Shown here one piece after another: positions 49,445 through 64,000 of a DNA stretch of 64,000 bases. Location: IMG/VR virus record IMGVR_UViG_3300029908_000004, positions 151,292-215,291 of that record; one strand, written 5' to 3'. A program made the position numbers and the translations under genes. The notes under the pieces are model-generated. The model had not been told where the DNA came from, did not search any database, and saw nothing but the letters and a program-made list of their open reading frames with translations. Position 1 is the stretch's first letter; each line of letters opens with the position of its first letter.

Positions 49445-50548
49445 TTACACGGCATTTTCTACAGGTACCTCGTTAACAATTTCTTCTTGGTCGTTTTCAA
49501 CTACTTCCTTAGGAGCCATAGCTGTTTTAATGGTTTCTAGGAAGTCTGGGTCTTCACACATAAGTTTGTAAAATTCAAGATCCCCTTGCAATTTTACATT
49601 TCCGAAGGAGAGCCAAGAACCACTCTTCTCTATGATTTTAGATTGCTTAGCGGTCTCAAATACATCCCAAATAGGACAGAATCCACGACCATTTATATAA
49701 GAAAGTAGTACATGCTTATAAGGAGCAGAGATCTTATTCTTTGCTGTGTATACGTCTATCTTTACACCGATGATCTCATCGTTCTTACCTTTTATCTTTT
49801 CGACCAATCGTAACTCTAACCTTATAGTAGCAAAGAATGGCATAGCGTTACCACCAGAGGTCTTATACCGTACTCCCTGAGGACTATACCCACCTATCTG
49901 TGGCAATGCTTGATTAATCCATAGGGCAGTAGCCCTTACATGAGTAAACTTACGAACGTGATCATACATAAGTTTACCTATACCACCCGGTTGTGCTGGG
50001 TCTGACGGGTCTCGTTCTAAATCTACTCTCTTTGCTAAAGCAGCCATTGAATCCACAATTACCAAATCACAAATTCTGGAGACAAGACCTACATAATTAA
50101 CTATCTTTTCTCCATTCATTGTTTCACCAGTTTCTGGGTCGTACCCCTTAGCTAGGTATACAGGATGTATACCTGACTCAAGAGTAGGATTCATAATATA
50201 ACCTAGCTCCTCTAAATATTCCTCTGTAATAGTGTCTTCTATATCTACAATAGTAACTAGTTTACCTAGTTTCTGCCACATAACTCCTATCTGTAGGGCT
50301 ATTGAAGTCTTACCTACTTCTGGGTCTTTAGAATAAATTTCTACACGTCTACTTAGTGGACACCCAGGCTTTGCACTATGTAGATTTTTATCTAGACGTG
50401 GGAGACCTGTTGTCAAGGTTTCCACAGTCATATCTACGCGGTCACATATCTTACGGAAGAACCCAGCTAAACCATTCTCAGCCAGTTCCTTTTCAAAATG
50501 GGAGTCTAGTTCAGGGTTTTCAATCTTCTTTTTACTTGTCTTTGACAT
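49445..50548 (-). CDS. recA: RecA/UvsX recombinase
   Basis: TTG...LD, RRVEIYS..EVGKTS, VDIE, IVDSMAAL, INQ, TSGGNAMPFFATIRLEL, KNKISAPYK, IIEKSGSWLSF. Confidence 0.95.
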   Translation of the reverse strand: MSKTSKKKIENPELDSHFEKELAENGLAGFFRKICDRVDMTVETLTTGLPRLDKNLHSAKPGCPLSRRVEIYSKDPEVGKTSIALQIGVMWQKLGKLVTIVDIEDTITEEYLEELGYIMNPTLESGIHPVYLAKGYDPETGETMNGEKIVNYVGLVSRICDLVIVDSMAALAKRVDLERDPSDPAQPGGIGKLMYDHVRKFTHVRATALWINQALPQIGGYSPQGVRYKTSGGNAMPFFATIRLELRLVEKIKGKNDEIIGVKIDVYTAKNKISAPYKHVLLSYINGRGFCPIWDVFETAKQSKIIEKSGSWLSFGNVKLQGDLEFYKLMCEDPDFLETIKTAMAPKEVVENDQEEIVNEVPVENAV

Positions 50549-52915: not shown

Positions 52916-52941
52916 ATGGCAGTGGAACTAACCACTGCCAT
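52916..52941 (-). terminator. Terminator-like hairpin after the AAA ATPase gene
   Basis: 10-bp perfect stem ATGGCAGTGG/CCACTGCCAT with 6-nt loop. Confidence 0.65.
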
Positions 52942-52947
52942 CTTTAG

Positions 52948-54963
52948 TTAATCATCGTCTCCGAACTCACCACCCTTGCTACGTATCCCAAGTTCTCTAC
53001 GCAAGGCAGCTTTGTCGGCGGCTAGTGCCCTCCATTCAGGTGGGCAATAACCTAGGTGGTCAACGTAGATAAGCGATAGCTTCGTCATACGTTCAACTTC
53101 TTCAGTGTTAGGTAGGATATCGTCCATAGCCTGATTCCAGTCTGCTATTGACATGGAATAGTCTGGTTTACCATCTGACTTTACTCTACCAGCAAACGCT
53201 GCATTGTCTAACGCTTCTTTCAGAACAACTTCAATCTCAGCACCAGTCCAAACACGTTTGCTATCATACAACAGACGACCTAAACCATTATCAGCTGTCT
53301 TCTCTGTAGCTGCTACTTCCTTAGCAAACTTTACACCATGCTTACGAAGTAACGCAGCCAAGATGTCAAGCCTTCCCTTACTATCACCCTTCTGAGGGGG
53401 TAGCGCTGGCACCTTGGCATCAAAACGACCAGACCTAATCAGAGCACCGTCAAGTAAATCTGGACGGTTAGAAGCACCGATTACTACAACCCTACCAGTT
53501 CTAGATTCATCTGACAACCAAGTCATGATAGAGTTAAATACTCTAGCGGAAGTTCCAGAATCTCCAGCAGAGGTCCTACCAGAACTTAGTACTGAATCCA
53601 TTTCATCTAGGAATACAATACAAGGAGCAGCAGAGTCTACAGCTTCCAAGAACTTACGTGTCTTCTGTTCGGTTTCACCTACAATTCCACCGAATAGACG
53701 ATCCAAGTGTCCAATCATAAAGTTCATCTTGGCTTCCTTGGCTAGAGCTTTGGCAATGACAGTTTTACCTGTACCCGGGGGTCCAGTCATCAACATACCA
53801 CGGGTACATAGACGAGCATTACCTTGTTGTAGTGGAATGATAACTTTACGCTGGAAATATCTCTTCAAGTGTTCGTGCCCACCAATTTGTTCAAAGCCAT
53901 ACTCAGGCTCAAAGAACTCAACCAAGCCTTGATATTCATCTTCCAAAGCTCTCTGCTTCTGTTCACGAACCAAACGGAAGTCGATAGCTTCTCCAGTGAG
54001 CCAAGATTTCATGATTACAAATTCCATCTGTCTTCTTGACATACCAGCAGATTGAACAGCAAATTGATGGAGATCAAATCCAGTAGCCAAGTTCACCTTG
54101 GAGACTTCATTACTACCTATAACCATAGGTTTGCCCTTAGCAGCTACACTATTTTCAATGGTTCTGCTGAAGTTGGTTAGCCACTCCTCACGTTCTGTGA
54201 TTGTTGGCTTTCCAATAAGAATAGTGGAGATACCAACACCGCCTCCACGAAGGGACTCGTGGATTTCAGATAAGTGACGTGTCATAATAATGATTCTATT
54301 ACGGTTACCTAACTGTTCATCCCTCGCCCAGTTACGGATATGAACAATCTGTGGGCGATCGGCATATAATTGTGCTATATCCCCCTGAGGAAACAAAGAA
54401 TCACCATCGGTAAACAACACAGTCAACAACAACTCTGGTTGAGTAGCCTGATTATTCATTATCTTCATCTCGTTAGAACGATGAATTTCTTTATTAGCTA
54501 TGAACCAGCGTTGTAAAACTAAACAACAATTTTCTATCTGGGTAGGTTTATCCCAACCAGCCGGCCAGTTCTCTACCGTTTCCCCATAGAAGGACTTCAT
54601 AGTGTCTACCCAAGCAGTGTGACTATTCTTGTTAGCAAACTCTAGTCCAGAGGACAGGTTAAAAGAAGCTAATATCCTAGTGGTATTACGATTTGTTTTT
54701 ACTTCCTGCTCATCTTGTATACCACGACCCACTTTGTCAGACACACTGCCTCTAATTTCACGAGCCACATTATCGTCCATAGCGATCGCTATAGTACGAT
54801 CAATTGGTTGTCTGGCTCCTGTGTTGTCACAATAATCGTTGATGTTACCATGAACGATGAATACGTGGGCAATCTTGGATCTATAATCACTTTTGATCGT
54901 CTTGATGAACTCCGGGATTGGTTGCTGTTCCGGTTGCTGCTTCTTCACTGTCGCAAATGCCAT
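52948..54963 (-). CDS. Classical-clade AAA+ ATPase (Ycf46/Cdc48-like) with degenerate N-terminal ATPase domain
   Basis: FEQIGGHEHLK, GPPGTGKT, pore loop GIVGETE, VFLDEMD, ASNRPDLLDGALIRSGRFD, WTGAEIE. N-terminal HVFIVHGNIND...LFTDGDSLFP degenerate domain. Confidence 0.9.
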   Translation of the reverse strand: MAFATVKKQQPEQQPIPEFIKTIKSDYRSKIAHVFIVHGNINDYCDNTGARQPIDRTIAIAMDDNVAREIRGSVSDKVGRGIQDEQEVKTNRNTTRILASFNLSSGLEFANKNSHTAWVDTMKSFYGETVENWPAGWDKPTQIENCCLVLQRWFIANKEIHRSNEMKIMNNQATQPELLLTVLFTDGDSLFPQGDIAQLYADRPQIVHIRNWARDEQLGNRNRIIIMTRHLSEIHESLRGGGVGISTILIGKPTITEREEWLTNFSRTIENSVAAKGKPMVIGSNEVSKVNLATGFDLHQFAVQSAGMSRRQMEFVIMKSWLTGEAIDFRLVREQKQRALEDEYQGLVEFFEPEYGFEQIGGHEHLKRYFQRKVIIPLQQGNARLCTRGMLMTGPPGTGKTVIAKALAKEAKMNFMIGHLDRLFGGIVGETEQKTRKFLEAVDSAAPCIVFLDEMDSVLSSGRTSAGDSGTSARVFNSIMTWLSDESRTGRVVVIGASNRPDLLDGALIRSGRFDAKVPALPPQKGDSKGRLDILAALLRKHGVKFAKEVAATEKTADNGLGRLLYDSKRVWTGAEIEVVLKEALDNAAFAGRVKSDGKPDYSMSIADWNQAMDDILPNTEEVERMTKLSLIYVDHLGYCPPEWRALAADKAALRRELGIRSKGGEFGDDD

Positions 54964-55225
54964 ACTTTATTATCTCCATTTCTATAGGCCATGTTTCTCC
55001 AGGACCATTTGTTGAGGGACACCCTGTTAGTAGTAGTTCTCTTGCTATGTATAAGCCTAAATAACGAAAGACAGCTTGTTTCTTCTGATCCGGGTCTGTT
55101 AGATCCATATCAGCAGAAGCTTGCTGCCAAACTAAAGAGTCATCTTCCTCTATGCGTTGCATATCAAGACTAATAGAAGCTGCAAGAGTCATCCTAACTT
55201 GTATAATATCTTCATCTGAACGCAT
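54887..55225 (-). CDS. Hypothetical protein
   Basis: 112-aa acidic ORF with AGGTGG RBS, overlapping the ATPase start. Confidence 0.55.
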   Translation of the reverse strand: MRSDEDIIQVRMTLAASISLDMQRIEEDDSLVWQQASADMDLTDPDQKKQAVFRYLGLYIARELLLTGCPSTNGPGETWPIEMEIIKYGICDSEEAATGTATNPGVHQDDQK

Positions 55226-55243
55226 ACCGCCACCTAACTTATA

Positions 55244-55450
55244 TTATTTCTTCACTGGTTTCATTTTACTAAGCATCTTTAATAGCCTATTACGGCCAAT
55301 TTTGGTATGGTAAAGATTACCATGTTCTGGTTGGACATATAAATCAATGCTATTCTTTTCTATGTAATACCACCCTTTACCAGTAGTTATAACTGTACCT
55401 TTTGGTGTTGGTAAGTCATGTGGAAGTCCATCTTTAACATATTTCTTCAT
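55244..55450 (-). CDS. Small hypothetical protein
   Basis: 68 aa in operon. Confidence 0.6.
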   Translation of the reverse strand: MKKYVKDGLPHDLPTPKGTVITTGKGWYYIEKNSIDLYVQPEHGNLYHTKIGRNRLLKMLSKMKPVKK

Positions 55451-55649
55451 CTTCTGTTTCCTTATCTTTCTCTAATTCTAAATAATGCATTATCCAAAGC
55501 AAAAATAAAGCCAAGTAGAAACATCCTACACTGAGGAAGAACTCCCAAAGATGACCACCTAGTCTTGTGAAGTCCGCTCCAGCGATACCAGCAATCATAC
55601 TACATATTAAAATAATTATAATTACTAACTGTTCTGTGTATATATTCAT
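55434..55649 (-). CDS. Small two-TM membrane protein
   Basis: Two hydrophobic helices and a charged tail. Confidence 0.65.
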   Translation of the reverse strand: MNIYTEQLVIIIILICSMIAGIAGADFTRLGGHLWEFFLSVGCFYLALFLLWIMHYLELEKDKETEDEEIC

Positions 55650-55676
55650 ATTGTACCTACATTTAACAATTAATAT

Positions 55677-55970
55677 TTATAGCTGTGTCATACCGTGTAA
55701 TGCTTCTTCTACGCGTGCTCGCCATTCTTTTTGTGGGAATGAATGAGCATATAGGAAAGCTATCAGTTCACCAGCACTAAAGCCACCACGGCATTCTCCT
55801 GTAACGAGGGCTGCTTGTTCTCCATACACTGCGCAATATACTTCATAAGCTCGTATAGTTACCGTTTGTGGGCAGCGAGCAGACTGATGTACCACTCTTC
55901 GCGTTTGTACCGGGTGTACTGGTACATCCAATTTCATACAACATTGCCCATGACACTCATAATCACTCAT
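55677..55970 (-). CDS. Hypothetical phage protein
   Basis: AYEVY...YGEQ...RGGFSAGEL motif. Confidence 0.65.
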   Translation of the reverse strand: MSDYECHGQCCMKLDVPVHPVQTRRVVHQSARCPQTVTIRAYEVYCAVYGEQAALVTGECRGGFSAGELIAFLYAHSFPQKEWRARVEEALHGMTQL

Positions 55971-55981
55971 TATATTTCCCT

Positions 55982-56215
55982 TTACAAGAAGTTTGGGTCA
56001 ATTGGGTCGAATTTGTCATAGTTATTATCATCATCTGAGTCTTTTCGTCCGTCAGGCTTTGTAGGTTTAGCTACTCGTGGCTTAGCGATTGGAGTTGAGC
56101 AATATTTCAGACCATTCTCATGAACCCAAATTCCCCACATACCTTTCTCTTTAGAAATAAGACTCTTACAAAAGTCGCATAAGCCATAATTTTTGTTTTT
56201 AACTACTGATGCCAT
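55982..56215 (-). CDS. Small Zn-finger-like protein
   Basis: CDFC...WVH.....C. GTG start in the track, or ATG at 56209. Confidence 0.6.
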   Translation of the reverse strand: MASVVKNKNYGLCDFCKSLISKEKGMWGIWVHENGLKYCSTPIAKPRVAKPTKPDGRKDSDDDNNYDKFDPIDPNFL

Positions 56216-56241
56216 AGTTTATCCCTTCACGTCCTCGTGCT

Positions 56242-56655
56242 TCACTTCGTCCCTCCATTGGCTTTCCCGGCAAGCGCCGCCCGCGCAATCTCGTTTCCCC
56301 TGCTATTTCCGAAGTCCGGTTCGTTGCCAAGACGCGCCAGCTTATCTAATGCCGCCTCCAACTCTACGACGCGGGCCTTGAGCGCGGTATTCTCCTCCCT
56401 CACTCCTGCGAGTGCCGTTGCATTGCGAACCTTCTCTAAATCTCGCCACTGTTCCCATGCCGCCACGCGGGCCTTGAGCGTGGTGTTCTCGGCCTCCAGC
56501 GGGGCGGCGATATGGGCAGCGTAGGCGGCGTGGTCATGATAGAGTACGAAAGAACCTTCGGGATGCTCGTAAGCTTGTATTTCATCGCCGCCTTTGAATA
56601 CCAGAACACGGTATCGTTTGATCGGCTCCGCTGGCGTTACCTTCGGGGCAGTCAT
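56242..56655 (-). CDS. Coiled-coil hypothetical protein
   Basis: HPEGSFVLYHDH motif. ENTTLKARV/ENTALKARV duplication (DNA 56465-56490 and 56369-56394). Confidence 0.7.
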   Translation of the reverse strand: MTAPKVTPAEPIKRYRVLVFKGGDEIQAYEHPEGSFVLYHDHAAYAAHIAAPLEAENTTLKARVAAWEQWRDLEKVRNATALAGVREENTALKARVVELEAALDKLARLGNEPDFGNSRGNEIARAALAGKANGGTK

Positions 56656-57677
56656 CTTGTTTCCTCTTTTCCAATATGCATACCCAGCGCAATCCGTGAT
56701 CCTCTATGTCGTTCGTTGGCATATGTCCTCGGTTGAATCTGGAAGTCAATCGGAAGTCCTGTAATCTTTGACAGCCGTTCCGAAATAGCAACAGTCAGCA
56801 GCAGCCACTTCGCATCCTGTTCCCAGCATCTACCAGCGCCGGGAAACTCTGTGGCAAACTGTTCGTCCGACATGATGAACCGCACATCTACATCACGCCA
56901 GTCAGGACGATCAAGGGATGATCCGACAAGGTAGCACCCCCAACCGCCGAATGCCTCGGTGAGCTGGCGGCACGCCGTTTCGAGTGCAAAGATGGCCGGA
57001 GCACCAACGTAGTTACATTTCTTGCGCGGTGCTACTTCGGGGTCAGTCGTCTCCGGTGCGGGACTGCCATGTGCAGCACACGGCAACTTTCCGTGGCAGC
57101 AATCGCAAGTCATTGGCGGCGTTACCTTCGGGTCAGGCTGCACGATCGGCTCCGGCGCGGGCTGGTTGGCCTCTGCCGGATCATGTTCGACAATACGTTT
57201 CAGGATGTTAGATGCATCGAGGTGCGCGTAAGCGTGCTTTGGGCTGGCCTCCGACTTCTTTATTCCACGCGCTGGGTCAGGCATGTTCTCTTCTGCGAAC
57301 CGCTTGTCGTGCTCCGGATTATTTCCTCCGAAGATGTCTTCGTAAGGCGCGTCCGGTATCTTCGTCGCAATCTCATATTCCGCAAGGCATTCCGGTGAGT
57401 GACTGCGCCCATCCGTGCAGCCACAATTCTTTCCTTTGCAGGGCGGTAGTGTTTGATGTATGGCCTCCGCTGTTATAAACCGATCACCCTTGCTGCGTAC
57501 AGGTTCGGCGGAATCCCATACAAACCCGAGTTCCAGTGCAACGGACTGCCACGCTCTGTTAGCGTTCTCCTGCGGACTAGATGGCTCCCCGCACTGGACA
57601 GCGATGTACGGAACAGGTTTACTCGCGCCAAGGATGCGATCCAATTGCTGCTGTGATAGCTCAAATTCCTGTCTCAT
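56652..57677 (-). CDS. Mosaic protein with C-terminal Pol-beta-like nucleotidyltransferase motif
   Basis: CYLVGSSLDRPDWRDVDVRFIM (GS...DxD), later PIDFQIQ. Start at ATG 57677 (ATGA overlap, GAGG RBS). Confidence 0.65.
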   Translation of the reverse strand: MRQEFELSQQQLDRILGASKPVPYIAVQCGEPSSPQENANRAWQSVALELGFVWDSAEPVRSKGDRFITAEAIHQTLPPCKGKNCGCTDGRSHSPECLAEYEIATKIPDAPYEDIFGGNNPEHDKRFAEENMPDPARGIKKSEASPKHAYAHLDASNILKRIVEHDPAEANQPAPEPIVQPDPKVTPPMTCDCCHGKLPCAAHGSPAPETTDPEVAPRKKCNYVGAPAIFALETACRQLTEAFGGWGCYLVGSSLDRPDWRDVDVRFIMSDEQFATEFPGAGRCWEQDAKWLLLTVAISERLSKITGLPIDFQIQPRTYANERHRGSRIALGMHIGKEETR

Positions 57678-57982
57678 GAATTCCTCTTTCCTGCCGCGTC
57701 CGGTAGCTTCGGCAGAAACTTTGAGCACAACATCCCGCTAGGATGATGCACCGGAAGCCCCGGCCCAAGAATCGAACTGAATGGAGGCGTGATCGTTTTC
57801 TCCCCACGGTCGCACGCTTCACACGATACGTCGGGCGCGTCCGGTATCTTCGGGATACTGCCGCCAAGCTTGCTGGTGGTAACCGATGGTTCAGGTACGC
57901 ACCCACATAGAAAATTCCCGTTGATCGCGGCTTGCCCGCACATCGGACAATGAGAAAAGCTCGTGTAATGTTCGACGTTCAT
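57674..57982 (-). CDS. Cys-rich small protein
   Basis: CPMCG..CGC and CEAC..H....C. Confidence 0.6.
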   Translation of the reverse strand: MNVEHYTSFSHCPMCGQAAINGNFLCGCVPEPSVTTSKLGGSIPKIPDAPDVSCEACDRGEKTITPPFSSILGPGLPVHHPSGMLCSKFLPKLPDAAGKRNS

Positions 57983-58149
57983 AATTTCCCTTCCCTTATC
58001 CGTTGGATCAAACTCGGCTTAGGCTCTGGAGGTTTCTCGTTCTCGTTAATCCAGAATCCACAACGGGCGCACATCAGCTTGCAATCTCCCCCATACTTCA
58101 GGATTCGCTTCTTTGGTGGGCATGAACACCAAATTGGATCGTAACTCAT
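57979..58149 (-). CDS. 56-aa Zn-finger-like protein (absent from the ORF track)
   Basis: MSYDPIWCSCPPKKRILKYGGDCKLMCARCGFWINE...GKL*, with ATGA overlaps at both ends. Confidence 0.7.
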   Translation of the reverse strand: MSYDPIWCSCPPKKRILKYGGDCKLMCARCGFWINENEKPPEPKPSLIQRIREGKL

Positions 58150-58553
58150 CCCTTCTTCCCTTCTGCCGCGTCAAGGGCGGCGAGGATTGCGTCAGCGGCT
58201 TCCTTTTTCAAGCTCCTACTACCTTGGAAAAAATACTGCAACTTATTAAGCAATATCTCCTGCCTCTTATTGACTGGCACAAGGGAATCATTGCGGCAGG
58301 CAACAAAATCACGAAGAATCGTGGTGGCCAAGCCTCCATACTGCTTACCTGTTGTGGCTTCTATCGTTTCGACAGCGTCGCCTATTTCCTCCGGTGTTGG
58401 TGGCTCCAGTAGCTTGCCGGGTAGGTGGTCGGCTGCGGTTTTAATAACGATACGCCAGCCTGACCACTCAGGACTGTATGAGTATCCCGCTTCGTTCAGT
58501 GCTTTGATACTCGCTTGTTTAGCTGCTTGAAATACCTCTTCTGGTAGATTCAT
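58146..58553 (-). CDS. Hypothetical protein
   Basis: 135 aa, ATGA coupling, GGGGAG RBS. Confidence 0.7.
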   Translation of the reverse strand: MNLPEEVFQAAKQASIKALNEAGYSYSPEWSGWRIVIKTAADHLPGKLLEPPTPEEIGDAVETIEATTGKQYGGLATTILRDFVACRNDSLVPVNKRQEILLNKLQYFFQGSRSLKKEAADAILAALDAAEGKKG

Positions 58554-59014
58554 TTAGTCTTCTTCTCCCCTTCGTGGGCAGCGGGCAAGCGCTGTAGTCT
58601 ATCAATCTCTGCTGCGATGAGTGCACCCGCTTTCACGAGATTGCGGATAGGGTCAGGCGACGGCTTCCACCACTCATCACTCCATTTTGGGGGCCAGAAA
58701 ATCTCGTTTAATGGAGCGCGCTCTGGGTGCAGACAACCGTTCGCGCACAAATAACACTTGGCAACAGCGGTCAATTCGCAATCACTGTGTTCATCGTCAT
58801 GTTCTGGCGTCCAACCCTCCACTGTGATCTGCCGTTGCCGCTCCGCCGCGATTAGAGCCGCTCCGTTTGGAGTTGATAATGTTTGCCCAACTCTACTAGG
58901 GTGAGGAGCTTGACATTCACAATAATTATTTTGACAGCCTAATGCCCATACACTTTCATCGTGTGCTGAATGATCACCATTCTTACAACTATCACAGATT
59001 GTTGGGTTACTCAT
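58550..59014 (-). CDS. Chimeric hypothetical phage protein
   Basis: AT-rich Cys/His N-terminus fused to a GC-rich IAAERQRQITVEGWTPEHDDEH...NLVKAGALIAAEIDR domain common in phages. Confidence 0.75.
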   Translation of the reverse strand: MSNPTICDSCKNGDHSAHDESVWALGCQNNYCECQAPHPSRVGQTLSTPNGAALIAAERQRQITVEGWTPEHDDEHSDCELTAVAKCYLCANGCLHPERAPLNEIFWPPKWSDEWWKPSPDPIRNLVKAGALIAAEIDRLQRLPAAHEGEKKTK

Positions 59015-59721
59015 TATACAGGTACCAAGTTATCGCCCGGATCGTCTGAATTCTTAGCATTGGTGTGCTGTGCTAATAATTGATCCATTGTAGTTGGCTT
59101 ACTTGGGGCGAACTCTTCCAAGAACTTCTCCGGTGGGAAGCCAGTTATCTGTGTTAATGCATCCTCATCAATGATAACTTCCATGATTTGAGGCTGAAGG
59201 TCCTTCTCTGAATACTTATCAGTGAAGAACACTACTTCTTGGTTCAACGAACCACGAAGTGGGTCAGAGGTAGCTCTAACTAACTGGTTGTACCTGCCAA
59301 ATACACCCCAATCCAATAAGCTCTTGATAGCACACCATAATTCTGGGCTACCAGCCTTCCAATCCCCAGTTTCTGCTGACTTCCACTTGAATTTACCAGT
59401 CTCTAATTCTTTTATGGTGTAACCACTGAATGAACCTATAGTTAGATCTGGTCGCTCTCTTCTAATAGCATCACATAACAAGTACAAGAACTGTGCTTGC
59501 TGGAAAGGTTCGCCGCCAGAGAAGGTAATACCTTCTACGTCTTTAAGACCCTTTACCCAGTCAATAATCTCTGATAGATAAGTTTCTTTCTTGTTATCGA
59601 AAGCATGAGTGTCAGGATTCCAACATCCCGGACACCCAAGTGAACAACCAGCGAACCAAAGAACGGCCCGATTCCCTGGGCCGTTGGCAGTTGACGAATC
59701 AATTTTACTGTAGACTAACAT
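59014..59721 (-). CDS. NrdG-like radical SAM (4Fe-4S) protein
   Basis: NGPGNRAVLWFAGCSLGCPGCWNP (CX3CX2C), GITFSGGEPFQQ, FSGYT, LRGSLNQ. Start at ATG 59721 coupled to the upstream stop. Confidence 0.88.
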   Translation of the reverse strand: MLVYSKIDSSTANGPGNRAVLWFAGCSLGCPGCWNPDTHAFDNKKETYLSEIIDWVKGLKDVEGITFSGGEPFQQAQFLYLLCDAIRRERPDLTIGSFSGYTIKELETGKFKWKSAETGDWKAGSPELWCAIKSLLDWGVFGRYNQLVRATSDPLRGSLNQEVVFFTDKYSEKDLQPQIMEVIIDEDALTQITGFPPEKFLEEFAPSKPTTMDQLLAQHTNAKNSDDPGDNLVPV

Positions 59722-60035
59722 GGTTTGCCCTTCCCTGTATGTTTCGATAGCTCTTCTGCTAGCTCGGCTATTTTGAGATGTAGTTCCCACTGATCCATCG
59801 AAGTTATCAGGAAGTTGATATTGCAATTGTGACATTCTATAGCCCCCAAGGTTATTTCTACTTCCTCTGAGATTGTTTTACTAATACTTTTGCCATCAAC
59901 AACTTCCTGTTGGATATCTCTGCGTATTTCGCCTCGCAAAGTAAGAGTGTGCCCCTTACATTTTGGACATTCTATTGGGTCCGTCAGGACTGTTGGAGGA
60001 ACTAATTCTTCGCGAACTAATACGACTTTATCCAT
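59715..60035 (-). CDS. Zn-ribbon protein
   Basis: CPKC...CHNC. Confidence 0.7.
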   Translation of the reverse strand: MDKVVLVREELVPPTVLTDPIECPKCKGHTLTLRGEIRRDIQQEVVDGKSISKTISEEVEITLGAIECHNCNINFLITSMDQWELHLKIAELAEELSKHTGKGKPC

Positions 60036-60038
60036 TGT

Positions 60039-60233
60039 CTACTTTCCTACATTCAACTTGTTTACGTTGGGTTGTTCCTTGTGATAATCTGATTTGATAG
60101 TCTCAGATTTCACCTTACCCATAGCTTCGAAAGCCTTCGCGACGTCCTTACAGCCCTTACCCTTAAAGCCCTCTAAATCCAGACTGAAGTTACCATCACC
60201 ATCTATTTCAACTGTCACAATTTTATCCGCCAT
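60039..60233 (-). CDS. DUF2997-like small protein
   Basis: VTVEIDGDGNFSLDLEGFKGKGCKDVAKAFEAMG...KSDYH. AAGGAG RBS. Confidence 0.8.
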   Translation of the reverse strand: MADKIVTVEIDGDGNFSLDLEGFKGKGCKDVAKAFEAMGKVKSETIKSDYHKEQPNVNKLNVGK

Positions 60234-60264
60234 GTCTTTTCTCCTTATTATAGGGTATCCTAGA

Positions 60265-60696
60265 TTAGATACCCACCTTGAATGTTAGTTTTATAGCACC
60301 TTGTGGGGTTACAGTTCTCCCCTGAAAGCTAAGATTAGAACCATTAGCTATCTTTCTAGCATGTTTCTCAGCGTACTTCTGTTTCAACTGTTTCATCCAA
60401 GCTTCGTTGTGAAAACTTGAATCAAACTGAGAGATGATAGCTTTGAAGTTGCCATCAGGACCCCTCTTAAAACCAATATCATTAGACGCATTACCAACTT
60501 CCTTACGTCTAATTATTATCTCTGCCGTATCTTTCCTCTTCTCACCGTGGTAGCCCTCTAAATTCTGAGCCTCTGCGTGTGATTCTGGATTAGCTTGTTC
60601 ACCTTCTTTAATTCCCCTGAATTTCATTTCCTTTAAGGAATCAACAAGGCATTCTTGATTTGACATATTTGTATCTAGTGTTCTGTAAGCAGACAT
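60265..60696 (-). CDS. DUF1257 (Ycf35-like) protein
   Basis: MSAYRTLDT..SNQECLVDSLKEM...LEGYHG...AEIIIRR...SNDIGFKR..DG.F...LKQKYA. Confidence 0.82.
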   Translation of the reverse strand: MSAYRTLDTNMSNQECLVDSLKEMKFRGIKEGEQANPESHAEAQNLEGYHGEKRKDTAEIIIRRKEVGNASNDIGFKRGPDGNFKAIISQFDSSFHNEAWMKQLKQKYAEKHARKIANGSNLSFQGRTVTPQGAIKLTFKVGI

Positions 60697-60725
60697 TTTA
60701 TCCTTCTACTATCTATTATAAAATA

Positions 60726-60754
60726 GTGGGGCTATACATTGCATATAGCCCCAC
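60726..60754 (-). terminator. Terminator-like hairpin between the DUF1257 paralogues
   Basis: 11-bp perfect stem GTGGGGCTATA/TATAGCCCCAC, followed by TATTTT on the minus strand. Confidence 0.65.
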
Positions 60755-60760
60755 AACTGA

Positions 60761-61171
60761 TTATACGTGGCGGAATTGTAGTTGCTGAACGGGCTTTCCG
60801 TTCTTAGTTACCTGGCGATAACCAATGAATTCCATGCCAGCGTTCTTGGCAATTTTCTTTGCCTTAGCTACAGCATAGGCTGGAACTACCTGCTTGGTGA
60901 TAGCAGATAGCTTGTGATCTGACTTACGTAGAACGTACTCATCACCAACTACATTGTACTTGCCGTCCTTGCCCATCGAGAATCCGATATCCCCACCATC
61001 GCCGATATCTTCCTTCTTCAGGATGATCTCAGCCTTGTAGGTCTCAGAACCGTGACCACGAACGCTTTCCTTCTTGTCATTAACCTCTGGCTTGTATCCC
61101 AAAGACTTCAAGGCGTCACAAAGAGTCACCTTGTCATTCATTTCTGTGTTTTGCGTGCGGAAGCAACTCAA
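60761..61171 (-). CDS. DUF1257 (Ycf35-like) protein, second copy
   Basis: Start reassigned to TTG 61171 (AGGAG RBS): MSCFRTQNTEMNDKVTLCDALKSLG...VRGHG...AEIIL...DIGF...DG.Y. Confidence 0.82.
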   Translation of the reverse strand: MSCFRTQNTEMNDKVTLCDALKSLGYKPEVNDKKESVRGHGSETYKAEIILKKEDIGDGGDIGFSMGKDGKYNVVGDEYVLRKSDHKLSAITKQVVPAYAVAKAKKIAKNAGMEFIGYRQVTKNGKPVQQLQFRHV

Positions 61172-61339: not shown

Positions 61340-62020
61340 CTACTTACCAGTAGCTTTTTTCTTATATTGCTCTAATCTGGGTTCAACATAGAAGTTAAAC
61401 CCAGCTACTAGCCTACCACGGTCAAGGATAATAACTGGTGGAGCTTCACCTATCGCTGGGACTAGTCGACCTATCGTATCATCGTCTCCCTTTATAATCT
61501 GATCGATGTTTGGTAGATTGTATAAATTCAGTTTAGCAGATTGCACCATAGAAAACAAGCAGAAATCCTTTATTAAGAGAGATTGTTTAACACTGAAGAT
61601 ACCAGTCTTTGGACAACACCTCTCTCCAACTTCGAACAATCCCTCTCCAGTGAGTTGTCTTTCTGCTAATGCTCTAACTCGCATAATATGGTTCTTCAGA
61701 CGAATTTTCTGTGACCCACCACCTGCTGGGTGAAAGCTGACTTCATAGCAGCTTTCCCCATAATCAGATTTGTTATTAGGCAAGGTTTTTAACAACTCTC
61801 CTGCATTCTTTGCTCCCTGAGATAAGACGTCTGTCTCTTCGTAAGGCCAAAGATTTATCGGGGTAGGGGTTTTGAATAGAGCTTGCATCACATTTTTACA
61901 TACAGGACAAGTATGCCCGTATACTAATGGGAATTCTAAGTTCTTTACCTCTCCCTTAAAACTATTTCTTTTCGTAAGAATTAGTTTTGGAGTAGTTTGG
62001 TTATTAGTTAGTTGTATCAT
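61340..62020 (-). CDS. Hypothetical protein with Cys motifs
   Basis: 226 aa, CPVC and CCP, TAATG-coupled to the helicase. Confidence 0.7.
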   Translation of the reverse strand: MIQLTNNQTTPKLILTKRNSFKGEVKNLEFPLVYGHTCPVCKNVMQALFKTPTPINLWPYEETDVLSQGAKNAGELLKTLPNNKSDYGESCYEVSFHPAGGGSQKIRLKNHIMRVRALAERQLTGEGLFEVGERCCPKTGIFSVKQSLLIKDFCLFSMVQSAKLNLYNLPNIDQIIKGDDDTIGRLVPAIGEAPPVIILDRGRLVAGFNFYVEPRLEQYKKKATGK

Positions 62021-63999
62021 TAATCCATCCTATCTTCAAAGTCAGATAAGTTTAGTTCTGGTACGAACATTGTGTCACCACCAGCTTCACGCATATAGGT
62101 TTGAATAGATAGTTCCTCTTCTAGAATTCTCTCTACGAACCAGTGGATATCTACTTCTCTTGCGCGTCGACTACCAACTTTACGATCTAACGCTTGTTCA
62201 GCAGCAACCATCTTACTATAAAACACATTGAAGATATGTTCGTCTAAAGAGTTCTTTGACAACATGATATAAATTTCACAAGTTCTCTCCCTAGTCTGTG
62301 GAGCCATTACACGGCTCCAAGCTTGGGTTTGGAACGCTGGACTCCATAGCAAATCACAGCAAATAACTGTGTCTGCGGCGGACAAGTCTACACCCTCACG
62401 GATTGCTCTTGTACCAGCGATAAAGACCTTTACGTTTTTATCACTTTGGAATTTATCAAAGTTCTCTTTTCTTGCTTCATCATCCCAAGATGTTTGGAAT
62501 TTGATTATTTGCTCTGGTTTCAACAGAGGGGTTTTACCAGAGGATAGATTTTTGTACACTGATTCATGCATAGCACGGAAATCACTAAGGATAAGGACCT
62601 TACCTTCTTCCTCAATTTTATCACTTACTATTTGACGAATCTGCGACATCTTTCCACCGCCAGCGACTCCTTTATATATCTCCCTACCAAGCTTCTCGTT
62701 CAACATCTCTGGGCAAGTAGAAGCAATTTTCATAGTAGTCATTTGACTTATGACTAAGGTAGAATTGATCTGTTGATTCTTCTTATCCGCCTCACTAGCC
62801 ATCTTCTCAAAGGTTTTCTTAAAATCTTTGATAGAAGACAGCATTAGTGCCGCCTGATATGGATCCATTGGACAGACTACCTTCTGTACATCTGCTTTTG
62901 GCATCATTCTACCATTAGCTACGAGAGTTTTCTTAAATAGAGGATCTTCGTAGTTACGACGAATGATTTTACTAGCCATGAAGGTCCAGAATTCTGGTGG
63001 ATTCTTCAGGAATGGAACACGTTTTCTAACAAGCTTCGTTAGTTGAACTTGTTTACCATTCTTATCGGTTTCCACACCTGCTGAACGTTCTAATGTAACA
63101 GAATCACAATACTTATAGTCGAACTCTTTTTCACCTTCTCCCCTAAAGTAAGGGAATTGTGAGCTTGGTCCGTTCTGTGTATAATGCAATGGCCAATAAG
63201 CGTCCATTGGTGAATTAGAGATTAAAGTTCCAGTTAATCCTATTTTCCTACGAGATCTTAGATTAAATGTAGCTTTAGAACTTTGTGTAAGATCGTCCTT
63301 ACAGTTATGTATTTCATCTGGTATAACTAATGTATACTTCTTCATTAGTCTCTTGTATCTACCGGGTGTCCAATTACCATCAGCTACATGACACTTAGGA
63401 CAATAACGTCCTTTTATCCTCCAGTCATAACAGTTTGCATGAGCAGCTAATTCATAATCTACATACCCACCAGTATGTTTGATCAACTTATCAGATTGCC
63501 ATGCACTACCAATATTTTCCCTATTGTCTGTAACATAGGAACATTTCTTGTTAAGACATCTATAGCCTCTAGACTTAGTCCATTCCATCTTTTCAGAAGA
63601 TTCTGATTTAACAAACCTTTGTAATGGTTGCTTACAGTGTGGACATAGATTCTCTAGTTTTATAGCAGTCCATAGCTTAGTAATTTTATCCTTCACATCA
63701 CGAGTGGATGGCTTTAGCTTACCAGCCCAATCTTGACGTGCTTTCCAACAAGGGTCGTCTTCCTGTCTTAACCACGTATAAGAATATAAATGGTACTTAG
63801 CTTTACTCTTTGTATCTGCCCAATTACGAATGGATATGAAATCTTTACCTTCTTTAAAACCTAATCGTTCGAATTCCTTCTCCCAGAAGATTCTGGCATT
63901 GCCCGGGGCTACAATAGCTACTTTCTTGCTACCAACTAATTCAGCATAAGCAATAGCAAAAGATGTCTTAGCCATACGCATAAGATAAGCATTGATAAC
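62020..63999 (-). CDS. SNF2-like SF2 helicase with inserted Zn-finger region (5'-partial)
   Basis: Frame open to the window end (VINAYLMRMAKT, motif I). IVAP, IPDEIH, LTGTLISN, KVLILSDF, EGVDLSAAD, WSP...QAWSRV. CPHC/C...C/CPKC insertion. Confidence 0.88.
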   Translation of the reverse strand, partial: VINAYLMRMAKTSFAIAYAELVGSKKVAIVAPGNARIFWEKEFERLGFKEGKDFISIRNWADTKSKAKYHLYSYTWLRQEDDPCWKARQDWAGKLKPSTRDVKDKITKLWTAIKLENLCPHCKQPLQRFVKSESSEKMEWTKSRGYRCLNKKCSYVTDNRENIGSAWQSDKLIKHTGGYVDYELAAHANCYDWRIKGRYCPKCHVADGNWTPGRYKRLMKKYTLVIPDEIHNCKDDLTQSSKATFNLRSRRKIGLTGTLISNSPMDAYWPLHYTQNGPSSQFPYFRGEGEKEFDYKYCDSVTLERSAGVETDKNGKQVQLTKLVRKRVPFLKNPPEFWTFMASKIIRRNYEDPLFKKTLVANGRMMPKADVQKVVCPMDPYQAALMLSSIKDFKKTFEKMASEADKKNQQINSTLVISQMTTMKIASTCPEMLNEKLGREIYKGVAGGGKMSQIRQIVSDKIEEEGKVLILSDFRAMHESVYKNLSSGKTPLLKPEQIIKFQTSWDDEARKENFDKFQSDKNVKVFIAGTRAIREGVDLSAADTVICCDLLWSPAFQTQAWSRVMAPQTRERTCEIYIMLSKNSLDEHIFNVFYSKMVAAEQALDRKVGSRRAREVDIHWFVERILEEELSIQTYMREAGGDTMFVPELNLSDFEDRMD

Positions 64000-64000
64000 A

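What the first reader, a model, noticed from the sequence alone, without database searches (positions are those of the whole stretch)
52948..61171. Dispersed AAA+ / 2x DUF1257 / DUF2997 / radical SAM module of unknown function on a phage
Seen: co-oriented DUF1257-like paralogues (60761-61171, 60265-60696), a DUF2997-like gene (60039-60233), a Zn-ribbon gene, an NrdG-like radical SAM gene (59014-59721) and, about 4 kb downstream beyond small ORFs and a GC-rich island, an AAA+ ATPase with a degenerate N-terminal ATPase domain. Known: DUF1257 (Ycf35), DUF2997 and Ycf46-type AAA+ genes co-occur as a conserved, functionally unresolved neighbourhood. No anaerobic RNR (NrdD) is in the window. Inference: an ancestral operon split by insertions, encoding an ATP-driven remodelling machine with small adaptor or substrate proteins and a radical-SAM modifier, possibly for host takeover or anti-defence. 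The DUF1257 duplication suggests specialisation.
Basis: partly seen in the sequence, partly recalled or inferred. Interest (0 to 1): 0.72.

Follow-up and report, generated by a model that had tools for sequence, protein, structure and literature searches.

The report
Phage Ycf46/Ycf35-type AAA–radical SAM cassette
An uncultured 215-kb peat phage carries a real, widely conserved but uncharacterised gene cassette (an AAA+ unfoldase, two Ycf35-like proteins, a DUF2997 protein and an orphan glycyl-radical-activase-like enzyme) that also sits on plasmids and other phages and could help explain the old 'ycf35/ycf46' mystery genes of cyanobacteria and plastids.

Summary
The whole 215-kb genome has no NrdD and no glycyl-radical domain.

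In relatives whose AAA is 46-60% identical, the order is CxxC protein, DUF1257 (one or two), DUF2997, (Zn-ribbon), radical SAM, small protein, AAA, without a break. The 3.8-kb stretch in this window is a lineage-specific insertion, found only here and in an identical twin contig.

The new point is that the radical SAM enzyme is not a stray NrdG. It belongs to a separate 200-235 aa subfamily. Outside this phage clade that subfamily sits in AAA-DUF1257-DUF2997-rSAM operons on unrelated mobile elements, including Paenibacillus polymyxa plasmid pPPM1a, an Arthrobacter plasmid and ParB-flanked metagenomic elements.

The AAAs of those cassettes are true Ycf46 relatives. The phage AAA is a longer variant whose model has a degenerate first AAA fold.

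DUF1257 and DUF2997 are fused in one bacterium, so they probably work as a pair. DUF1257 folds with high confidence but matches no solved structure.

The biochemistry is still inferred. My best guess is an ATP-driven protein remodeller whose small partners are modified by a radical enzyme. No paper in the searched library describes the cassette. Interest is moderately high.

The parts
61340..62020 (-). 226-aa conserved protein ('p226') with an invariant CxxC after a strand (YGHxCPxC). It lies directly upstream of the DUF1257 genes.
   Evidence: Present in all 15 of the first related loci with upstream DNA, and a similar 223-246 aa ORF sits there in L121-L123. C38 and C41 are invariant. No Pfam, PDB or Glutaredoxin-HMM support. 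The Atlas lead to thioredoxin-fold proteins scores only 0.82.
60761..61171 (-). DUF1257 (Ycf35-like) paralogue A, 136 aa, with a TTG start.
   Evidence: PF06868 E 1e-10. SD plus TTG. Groups with the 'A' copies of L002, L012, L004 and L017 (support 87/80). It has the highest depth in RNA-library contigs.
60726..60754 (-). 13-bp-stem hairpin followed by a T-run, lying between the two DUF1257 genes. It looks like a terminator or attenuator, and a promoter-like site follows it.
   Evidence: Depth in RNA-library contigs drops after it in one run. The total count of such sites in the region is not above chance.
60265..60696 (-). DUF1257 (Ycf35-like) paralogue B, 143 aa.
   Evidence: PF06868 E 1.9e-11. 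AF2 model pLDDT 95.5. S2 and G75 are invariant in 147 sequences. The family has 3034 representative clusters.
60039..60233 (-). DUF2997 protein, 64 aa, with an invariant Cys28 and Gly39.
   Evidence: PF11211 E 5.2e-8. Present in every related locus. Fused to DUF1257 in Bacillota locus L101. Alignment.
59715..60035 (-). 106-aa protein with two CxxC pairs (Zn-ribbon-like) and a C-terminal helix.
   Evidence: Sequence. Homologues in 10 of 15 loci. Similar 113-114 aa ORFs in L121 and L123. No family above threshold.
59014..59721 (-). Radical SAM enzyme, 235 aa, like a glycyl-radical-enzyme activase: NGPGNR motif, CX3CX2C, GGEP, and a conserved C-terminal extension.
   Evidence: Subfamily and neighbourhoods.
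55244..59014 (-). Lineage-specific insertion of ten ORFs. It has a GC-rich block (56242-59014; includes a 358-aa protein with a nucleotidyltransferase-like C-terminus) and an AT-rich block of four small ORFs (55244-56215).
   Evidence: GC profile. The ORFs are found only in the window and its twin L001. Absent at this junction in L002, L013 and L121. Atlas result.
54887..55225 (-). 112-aa conserved protein ('p112') that overlaps the AAA start by 77 nt.
   Evidence: Present just upstream of the AAA in all 15 loci. Conserved NGP/CGP motif. No family hit.
52948..54963 (-). AAA+ ATPase, 671 aa. It has a degenerate D1-like fold (about residues 15-340) and an active classic-clade AAA domain: Walker A GPPGTGKT at 394-401, Walker B D453/E454, sensor N499, and Arg 510/513.
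   Evidence: Ycf46 profile match. More than 4000 homologues, some with inteins.
52916..52941 (.). 10-bp-stem bidirectional hairpin just after the AAA stop codon. Probably the end of the transcription unit.

Best explanation
The region encodes one conserved functional cassette of mobile elements. In this phage a 3.8-kb insertion has split it.

Shown:
- The ancestral order is CxxC protein, DUF1257 (one or two copies), DUF2997, (Zn-ribbon), radical SAM, p112, AAA.
- DUF1257 and DUF2997 always occur together and are fused in one bacterium.
- Outside this phage clade, the AAAs of such cassettes are Ycf46-family proteins.
- The radical SAM belongs to a dedicated subfamily that travels with these AAA ATPases and has no glycyl-radical enzyme partner.

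Inferred mechanism:
- The AAA forms a hexameric, ATP-driven protein unfoldase or remodeller. One ring is active and a degenerate D1-like ring acts as scaffold.
- A DUF1257-DUF2997 heteromer is its dedicated cofactor or client.
- Where the radical SAM enzyme is present, it uses SAM and a [4Fe-4S] cluster to abstract a hydrogen atom from a protein backbone or side chain. That is the chemistry of PflA and NrdG.
- The most likely target is one of the small cassette proteins. DUF2997 is encoded directly upstream in most cassettes and has an invariant Cys and Gly. DUF1257 has an invariant Gly.
- The AAA would expose or reset that site.

The biological purpose is unknown. The module is syntenic in every sampled relative of this jumbo-phage lineage, lies inside the replication and nucleotide-metabolism gene block, and shows up in peat RNA libraries.
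For: Family calls.

Synteny:
- SNF2, p226, DUF1257, DUF2997, p112 and AAA are present in all 15 of the first loci with upstream DNA.
- L121-L123 carry DUF1257, DUF2997-like, rSAM and AAA genes in the same order, with ORFs of matching size at the p226 and p112 positions; the p226-like ones carry the CxxC.
- The genes are contiguous in L002, L013 and L121.

Independent cassettes outside the clade:
- AAA-DUF1257-(DUF1257)-DUF2997-rSAM-DUF3150 beside ParB in 3 of 3 distant contigs chosen only by rSAM similarity of 47-50%.
- pPPM1a carries AAA-DUF1257-DUF2997-'4Fe-4S single cluster' protein.
- Arthrobacter and B. cereus plasmids carry versions of it.
- The rSAM also sits beside an AAA gene in the PIN-type sets and within 2 kb of one in the Calothrix Hsp70/TPR set.

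Other evidence:
- A DUF1257::DUF2997 fusion exists.
- The cassette AAAs are 30-39% identical over their full length to the Prochlorococcus Ycf46-like AAA (488 aa). The phage AAA profile matches the Ycf46 profile with E 5e-45.
- All catalytic AAA residues are invariant.
- The AAA model aligns with tandem-AAA proteins.
- The rSAM has an invariant NGPGxR, CX3CX2C and GGEP and aligns to PFL-AE.
- The rSAM falls below the NrdG cut-off. True plasmid nrdG genes lie next to nrdD and align over only 79%.
- The genome has no NrdD or Gly_radical domain.
- ycf35 and ycf46 are lost together in red-algal plastids (PMC5940233).
- RNA-library contigs at 99% identity or more cover the cassette.
Against: - No biochemical or genetic data exist for any member. 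Literature searches found none.
- The predicted complex of rSAM with the three small proteins did not reach the mark, so it gave no verdict.
- DUF1257 and DUF2997 work without any radical SAM in cyanobacteria, in RHph_I4 and in 7 of 18 related phage loci, so radical chemistry cannot be their general role.
- The rSAM also occurs with AAA ATPases without DUF1257/DUF2997, so its target may be the AAA or an AAA client rather than the small proteins.
- Conserved synteny inside one phage clade is weak evidence on its own.
- The DUF1257 fold gave no functional clue.
- The N-domain of the phage AAA is not significantly similar to the Ycf46 N-domain when tested alone.
- Reads in RNA libraries may include DNA.
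Confidence: 0.42

Rival explanations
1. The radical SAM gene is an ordinary NrdG that the phage carries to activate the host's anaerobic ribonucleotide reductase in anoxic peat. Its position next to the DUF genes would then be only phage synteny.
For: The best NCBIfam and PHROG hits are NrdG. JGI annotates homologues as NrdG. The phage comes from peat and sits among nucleotide-metabolism genes. The genome has a class I/II RNR, so it does invest in dNTP supply.
Against: The score of 84.6 bits is below the 126.1 cut-off, and only the N-terminal half matches. The subfamily has a conserved extra C-terminal part. It is found in AAA-DUF1257-DUF2997 operons on unrelated plasmids, including plasmids of Arthrobacter, Paenarthrobacter and Polaromonas; by general knowledge those genera are aerobes. 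True nrdG on Bacillus plasmids is adjacent to nrdD and aligns over only 79%.
Confidence: 0.08
2. The cassette is an iron-sulfur or thiol-redox service module. The AAA with DUF1257/DUF2997 (invariant Cys) would load, repair or reduce a [4Fe-4S] client. That client would be the radical SAM enzyme on mobile elements and ferredoxin Fed7 in cyanobacteria. The radical enzyme's own product, a small molecule or a modified nucleotide, would be the real output.
For: Cyanobacteria have a duf2997-ycf35-fed7 cluster, and Prochlorococcus has DUF2997-DUF1257-4Fe-4S ferredoxin. ycf35 and ycf46 are co-lost with ycf34 and heme oxygenase in plastids. A CxxC protein is always upstream in the phage clade. DsbA or thioredoxin genes lie near two plasmid cassettes.
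Against: DUF2997 has only one invariant Cys and DUF1257 has none. Many cassettes have no Fe-S protein at all (RHph_I4, L102). p226 is not detectably a glutaredoxin. No flavodoxin is encoded.
Confidence: 0.15
3. The cassette is a conflict system: defence, superinfection exclusion or counter-defence. The AAA would unfold or sense a target, and the radical enzyme or an associated effector would do the damage.
For: It lives on plasmids, phages and a Streptococcus phage satellite. It lies near ArdA, orphan methylases and ParB-like genes. A PIN-domain variant exists. The AAA domain resembles IetA of a known defence system.
Against: No cassette protein matches a PADLOC model beyond generic AAA or radical-SAM similarity. 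The module is a syntenic core gene set in every sampled relative of the jumbo-phage clade, and its AAA hosts inteins. By general knowledge, inteins are more typical of conserved core replication-type genes than of accessory immunity genes. Homologues are housekeeping genes in cyanobacteria and plastids.
Confidence: 0.2
4. The genes are neighbours only by descent and do not work together.
For: Phage gene order is conserved for many unrelated genes. The rSAM and the Zn-ribbon come and go. A hairpin may split the genes into two transcripts.
Against: The same combination has been assembled in different gene orders and on unrelated replicons across phyla. A DUF1257::DUF2997 fusion exists.
Confidence: 0.05

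Closest known systems
Ycf35 (DUF1257), DUF2997 and Fed7 cluster, and the Ycf46 AAA ATPase, of cyanobacteria and red-lineage plastids
   Same: Both DUF1257 copies and the DUF2997 protein pass the Pfam thresholds. The MS N-terminus, the D-[IV]-G-F motif and the GxxC motif are shared with the Prochlorococcus proteins. The AAA domain and lid match the Ycf46 profile.
   Different: The phage AAA is 671 aa rather than about 490, and its larger D1-like N-region is not significantly similar on its own. The genes are clustered with the AAA, which they are not in Prochlorococcus. A radical SAM stands where cyanobacteria have a 4Fe-4S ferredoxin. DUF1257 is duplicated. Function is unknown on both sides.
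AAA-DUF1257-DUF2997-'4Fe-4S single cluster domain' operons of plasmids (e.g. Paenibacillus polymyxa M1 pPPM1a, Arthrobacter pZXY22) and AAA-DUF1257-DUF2997 of Rhizobium phage RHph_I4
   Same: The same four (or three) families occur in one co-oriented cluster. The rSAM belongs to the same long subfamily.
   Different: Those AAAs are 500-560 aa Ycf46-type proteins. The gene order puts the AAA first. There is no CxxC protein, p112 or Zn-ribbon. In the window the cluster is interrupted by 3.8 kb. These operons are annotated only as DUFs, and no study was found.
Glycyl-radical-enzyme activases (NrdG, PflA)
   Same: The (D/N)GPGxR motif, the CX3CX2C cluster motif and the GGE SAM motif are shared. 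The protein aligns to solved PFL-AE over its first ~80 residues (46-125 of the 273-aa ORF).
   Different: It scores below every NCBIfam activase cut-off. It has an extra conserved C-terminal region. There is no glycyl-radical enzyme in the genome. It is linked to AAA ATPases instead.
Type II AAA+ unfoldases (Cdc48/p97/VAT, Rix7, Drg1)
   Same: The active domain gives its best sequence matches to p97/VAT (E 1e-60). The whole model superposes on D1-D2 of Rix7 and p97.
   Different: The D1-like half has lost the Walker A and B motifs. There is no N-terminal cofactor-binding domain. The pore-loop aromatic residue is replaced by Ile or Leu (GIVGE). TM-scores are only about 0.5.
IetA (AAA ATPase of the Ietus/IetAS anti-phage system)
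   Same: The AAA domain is similar (NCBIfam E 6e-22, PADLOC E 4e-26).
   Different: The score is far below the family cut-off (78 against 510 bits). There is no IetS protease partner. The similarity is limited to the generic AAA core.

Membership tests
Pfam DUF1257 (Ycf35) | Score above the PF06868 gathering threshold (22.2 bits) | tested here: met
   44.6 and 42.2 bits for the two ORFs. The profile search finds 3034 family clusters.
Pfam DUF2997 | Score above the PF11211 gathering threshold (24.1 bits) | tested here: met
   33.1 bits. The invariant Cys and Gly are shared with cellular members.
NrdG (anaerobic RNR activase) | Radical SAM core: CX3CX2C, GGE and the activase (D/N)GPGxR motif | tested here: met
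   NGPGNR, C26/C30/C33 and GGEP are invariant in 63 homologues. Alignment to PFL-AE.
NrdG (anaerobic RNR activase) | Score above the equivalog cut-off of an NrdG model | tested here: not met
   TIGR02491 gives 84.6 bits against 126.1. NrdG2 gives 37 against 131. NrdG3 gives 34 against 152.
NrdG (anaerobic RNR activase) | A cognate NrdD (or another glycyl-radical enzyme) in the same genome or next to the gene | tested here: not met
   PF13597 and PF01228 are absent from the 215-kb record, which CheckV rates 100% complete. None was called in any of the related loci or the distant rSAM-carrying contigs whose genes were listed. A host NrdD cannot be excluded.
Ycf46-family AAA ATPase | Classic-clade AAA domain with intact Walker A/B, sensor 1 and arginine fingers, plus a lid similar to Ycf46 | tested here: met
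   Invariant G394-K400, D453/E454, N499 and R510/R513. hhalign against the Ycf46 profile gives E 5e-45.
Ycf46-family AAA ATPase | Full-length collinearity with Ycf46, including its N-terminal domain (about 490-560 aa) | tested here: inconclusive
   The alignment extends over 95-666 against 38-514. The N-region alone gives E 0.14. The protein is 671 aa. No cellular genome gave an N-domain match.
Type II AAA+ (Cdc48/p97/Rix7) | Two tandem AAA folds | tested here: met
   Foldseek alignments of 650-680 columns to D1-D2 of Rix7, p97 and Drg1, with E about 1e-19 and TM about 0.5.
Type II AAA+ (Cdc48/p97/Rix7) | Nucleotide-binding motifs in D1 and an N-terminal cofactor-binding domain | tested here: not met
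   There is no P-loop in residues 1-340 (sequence; the only Pfam AAA hit is at 390-518). The model starts directly with the D1-like fold.
AAA-DUF1257-DUF2997-rSAM cassette of mobile elements | All four families co-oriented in one uninterrupted cluster | tested here: not met
   All four are present and co-oriented, but the AAA start lies 4.05 kb downstream of the rSAM stop. The cluster is uninterrupted in relatives L002, L013 and L121. I therefore file it as a disrupted or variant member.
Known anti-phage defence systems (PADLOC-DB v2) | A specific model match for at least the signature proteins | tested here: not met
   There are only generic AAA hits (IetA, TRIP13) and nothing for rSAM, DUF1257, DUF2997, Znr or p226. 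The plasmid versions give the same result.

The most novel reading that the evidence does not exclude
DUF1257 and DUF2997 together could form a minimal, two-subunit radical protein. The cassette's activase-like enzyme would abstract the alpha-hydrogen of the invariant DUF1257 glycine (G75). The resulting radical would then either pair with the invariant DUF2997 cysteine (C28), as in the Gly/Cys dyad of glycyl-radical enzymes, or form a Cys-to-C-alpha crosslink. The AAA ring would open or recycle the complex. That would be a new class of radical enzyme or radical-crosslinked protein. It would also give the first biochemical handle on plastid Ycf35 and Ycf46.
Probability: 0.08. Interest if true: 0.9.

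Novelty: new variant of a known kind. Interest (0 to 1): 0.62.

Why it matters
ycf35 and ycf46 are among the conserved cyanobacterial and plastid genes that still have no biochemical function.

This work shows that their relatives form a compact, mobile operon that repeatedly recruits one dedicated radical SAM subfamily. It also names tractable carriers: a Paenibacillus plasmid and a cultured Rhizobium phage.

That turns a vague co-occurrence into an experiment: does the radical enzyme modify the small proteins, and does the AAA act on them?

It also removes a common mis-annotation. 'NrdG' in these phages and plasmids is not evidence of anaerobic ribonucleotide reduction.

If the cassette proves to be a new radical-protein system, or a takeover or conflict module kept by a whole jumbo-phage lineage, it would matter to phage biology, radical enzymology and plastid biology.

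Tried and rejected
- Complex prediction of DUF1257-A, DUF1257-B and DUF2997 against the rSAM: median score 0.26, mark 0.32. No verdict, so it is not used as evidence either way.
- Near-identity and protein searches against cultured phages with the region and with DUF1257-B: no match. The window AAA found only partial AAA-domain hits.
- Scan of 185,579 species genomes with the phage AAA profile: only generic Cdc48/FtsH-type AAA domains. None had DUF1257 or DUF2997 nearby.
- Fold searches for DUF1257: Foldseek E > 0.03 and VIA Z <= 6.5, with KA1/IntS9-like alpha+beta arrangements at noise level.
- Glycyl-radical motif scan (R[VIL]xG[FYW]) of all genome ORFs: five scattered chance hits, none conserved.
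- The idea that a C-terminal 'HLGYCP' motif of the AAA is a radical site: rejected, because the Gly is not conserved.
- The idea that p226, p112 or p296 are homologues of DUF3150 or DUF6744, which follow the cassette elsewhere: hhalign probabilities are below 1%.
- The idea that p226 is a glutaredoxin: only a 0.82 Atlas feature lead. There is no Pfam, PDB-profile or Glutaredoxin-HMM hit.
- Strict coupling of DUF1257 paralogue A to the rSAM: weakened, because L016, L121 and L122 have the rSAM with only a B-type copy.
- PADLOC searches: nothing specific.
- Literature searches on the DUF and Pfam names, Ycf35/Ycf46 and Fer4_12: no functional study of the cassette.

Full report
**What is there**

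The window is the last 64 kb of a 215,291-bp IMG/VR virus record that CheckV rates complete. All genes between 49 and 64 kb run on the minus strand.

- An AAA ATPase of 671 aa (52948-54963), whose only PF00004 match is at residues 390-518.
- A Fer4_12/Radical_SAM protein (59014-59721).
- DUF2997 (60039-60233).
- Two DUF1257 genes (60265-60696 and 60761-61171).

The TTG start at 61171 follows an AGGAGA site and yields the family's invariant 'MS' N-terminus. The 106-aa ORF between DUF2997 and the radical SAM gene has two CxxC pairs but belongs to no family. A block with GC of 0.50-0.60 lies at about 56.2-59.0 kb in a genome of 0.41 GC.

**Is the radical SAM an NrdG?**

It has the activase hallmarks: NGPGNR, CX3CX2C and GGEP. 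It aligns to solved PFL-activase.

Several results argue against a true NrdG:
- It scores 84.6 bits against the NrdG equivalog cut-off of 126.1, and only over its N-terminal half.
- The genome has no NrdD and no glycyl-radical domain. It has one class I/II RNR and only this one radical SAM gene.
- Its 348 detected homologues are 200-250 aa proteins with a conserved C-terminal extension.
- True nrdG genes on Bacillus plasmids lie next to nrdD and align over only 79% of the length.

**Is the module real, and is it split?**

The AAA has more than 4000 homologues. Full-length relatives at 45-65% identity sit on contigs of about 100-230 kb. I collected 18 loci that carry upstream DNA and searched their ORFs with iterated profiles.

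- Among the 15 loci searched with profiles, all have SNF2 helicase, a 226-aa CxxC protein, DUF1257, DUF2997, a roughly 85-130 aa protein and the AAA, in that order. L121-L123 (gene calls only) show the same order, with ORFs of matching size at the p226 and small-protein positions.
- Ten of the first 15 have the Zn-ribbon ORF.
- Eleven of 18 have the radical SAM. The seven without it have closely similar cassette proteins and look like one lineage.
- In L002, L013 and L121 the radical SAM, the small ORF and the AAA are back to back.
- The ten ORFs at window 55244-59014 have homologues only in a 100%-identical twin contig.

This junction is a hot spot: other relatives carry an RNase T gene or a SpoU methylase there.

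**Evidence beyond phage synteny**

I picked three distant radical SAM homologues (47-50% identity) blind to their context. All three lie in the order AAA (514-525 aa), DUF1257, (second DUF1257), DUF2997, rSAM, DUF3150. They are flanked by ParB-like genes on plasmid- or megaphage-like contigs.

Other elements carrying the rSAM:
- Paenibacillus polymyxa M1 plasmid pPPM1a has AAA, DUF1257, DUF2997 and a '4Fe-4S single cluster domain protein'.
- Arthrobacter and B. cereus plasmids carry rearranged versions.
- The same rSAM type also sits directly after an AAA gene in PIN-domain gene sets (Moellerella, Polaromonas) and within 2 kb of one in an Hsp70/TPR set (Calothrix).

Elements with the cassette but no rSAM:
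- A Bacillota genome has AAA, DUF1257, DUF2997 and DUF6744.
- Another Bacillota genome has a DUF1257::DUF2997 fusion.
- Rhizobium phage RHph_I4 has AAA, a hypothetical gene, DUF1257 and DUF2997.
- Prochlorococcus has DUF2997, DUF1257 and a 4Fe-4S ferredoxin. This matches the published duf2997-ycf35-fed7 cluster (PMC4284462).

**The AAA**

The cassette AAAs of plasmids and cultured phages are 30-39% identical over their full length to a 488-aa Prochlorococcus AAA protein, that genome's only full-length match, which I take to be its Ycf46. They are therefore Ycf46-family proteins.

The phage AAA family matches that profile (E 5e-45) through the AAA domain and lid. Its first 320 residues are not significantly similar when tested alone.

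Its AF2 model (pLDDT 82) superposes on D1-D2 of Rix7, p97 and Drg1. The N-half lacks a P-loop.

The Walker A and B motifs, sensor 1 and both arginine fingers are invariant. Some homologues carry inteins.

**The small proteins**

- DUF1257-B folds with pLDDT 95.5 into a beta-sheet/helix domain that has no significant solved relative.
- Across 147 sequences S2 and G75 are invariant, and D73 and F76 nearly so.
- DUF2997 has an invariant Cys and Gly.
- The two window DUF1257 copies belong to two paralogue groups. Type A occurs only in loci that have the rSAM, but three rSAM loci have only type B. The link is therefore weak.

**Setting and expression**

The sequence recurs in at least 16 peat metagenome runs. 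Contigs from four peat RNA libraries match at 99% identity or more over 56.2-61.2 kb. Depth is highest over DUF1257-A, and there is none over 55.2-56.2 kb. DNA carry-over in those libraries cannot be excluded.

A 13-bp hairpin lies between the two DUF1257 genes, and a 10-bp hairpin follows the AAA gene.

**Interpretation**

Shown:
- This is a conserved cassette.
- In this phage it has been split by an insertion.
- Its radical SAM belongs to a dedicated, AAA-linked, NrdD-independent subfamily.
- Its other parts are Ycf35-like and DUF2997 family members, and its AAA is a long relative of the Ycf46 family.

Inferred (confidence about 0.4):
- The AAA is a protein remodeller.
- DUF1257-DUF2997 is its cofactor or client.
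- The activase-like enzyme performs hydrogen-atom abstraction on a protein, most likely one of the small partners.

Rivals are a host-NrdD activase, an Fe-S or thiol service module, a conflict system, and mere synteny. They are weighed in their own sections.

No paper in the searched library treats the cassette.

Noticed in passing
window 56242-59014: A GC-rich (0.50-0.60) six-ORF block sits inside the insertion. The 358-aa ORF (56652-57728) has a C-terminal nucleotidyltransferase-like domain (Atlas TM 0.87 by target to small viral NTase-like clusters). The 154-aa ORF (58550-59014) shares a C-terminal domain with nine PHROG families of unknown function. Its composition suggests recent acquisition from a higher-GC source.
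   Followed up: partly
window 55244-56215: Four small AT-rich ORFs (68-97 aa; one is hydrophobic, two are Cys-rich) are also specific to this lineage. No RNA-library contig covered them, while the flanking parts were covered.
   Followed up: partly
relatives of window 52948-54963 (P0031, P0047, P0074, P0076, P0080, P0088, P0101, P0114, P0117); L003:420-4553, L122:690-4847: Several AAA homologues are about 1000 aa and contain intein or homing-endonuclease domains. The neighbouring SNF2 helicase carries a LAGLIDADG insertion in two relatives. Intein traffic suggests these are conserved genes widely shared among co-infecting phages.
   Followed up: no
L106:5322-6866, L107:5696-7252, L108:5622-7199: The AAA of the ParB-flanked cassettes shows a Walker-B-like 'FLDEFEK' segment before the 'GPxGTxKS' P-loop in the hhalign alignment. 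This could be a permuted or two-lobed arrangement and deserves a structural look.
   Followed up: no
L110 (Moellerella pW18-2-a) and L112 (Polaromonas pPNAP02): A conserved set of an ~800-aa PIN-domain protein, a ~370-aa hypothetical protein, a ~620-aa AAA and the same rSAM subfamily lies next to ArdA on the Moellerella plasmid. The AAA resembles the PADLOC candidates PDC-M37B and DolB. It looks like a separate uncharacterised system that uses the same radical enzyme.
   Followed up: partly
L101:9591-10259 and L101/L102 downstream genes: There is a natural DUF1257::DUF2997 fusion protein (222 aa). In two Bacillota loci a DUF6744 protein follows the pair. In the ParB-flanked cassettes a DUF3150 protein follows the rSAM. 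These are further recurrent partners of unknown function.
   Followed up: partly
L111:5621-6076, L113:3582-4007 and L113:4222-4986: In Gram-positive plasmid cassettes the protein in the DUF1257 position starts with a hydrophobic, transmembrane-like segment (a weak DUF1257 match for the B. cereus one, none for the Arthrobacter one). A membrane protein with a ComEA-like helix-hairpin-helix domain is inserted in the cassette. This hints at a membrane- or DNA-associated role there.
   Followed up: no
window 62020-64000: The SNF2-family helicase ORF runs off the end of the record (653+ aa here, 917-960 aa in relatives). The linear record therefore starts and ends inside a gene, so its ends are assembly breaks in a probably circularly permuted or circular genome.
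   Followed up: no
window 54887-54963: The conserved 112-aa ORF overlaps the annotated AAA start by 77 nt, and by 44 nt in L002. The first 13 AAA residues are disordered in the model, so the true AAA start may lie further downstream, or the two genes are translationally coupled.
   Followed up: no
whole genome G000; window 49445-50548: There is no close cultured relative. RecA/UvsX is at most 30% identical to any phage in the collection. The replication block has a split family-A polymerase, SNF2 helicase, primase-helicase, RecA and nucleotide-salvage genes. This is an undescribed jumbo-phage lineage from peat and soil.
   Followed up: partly
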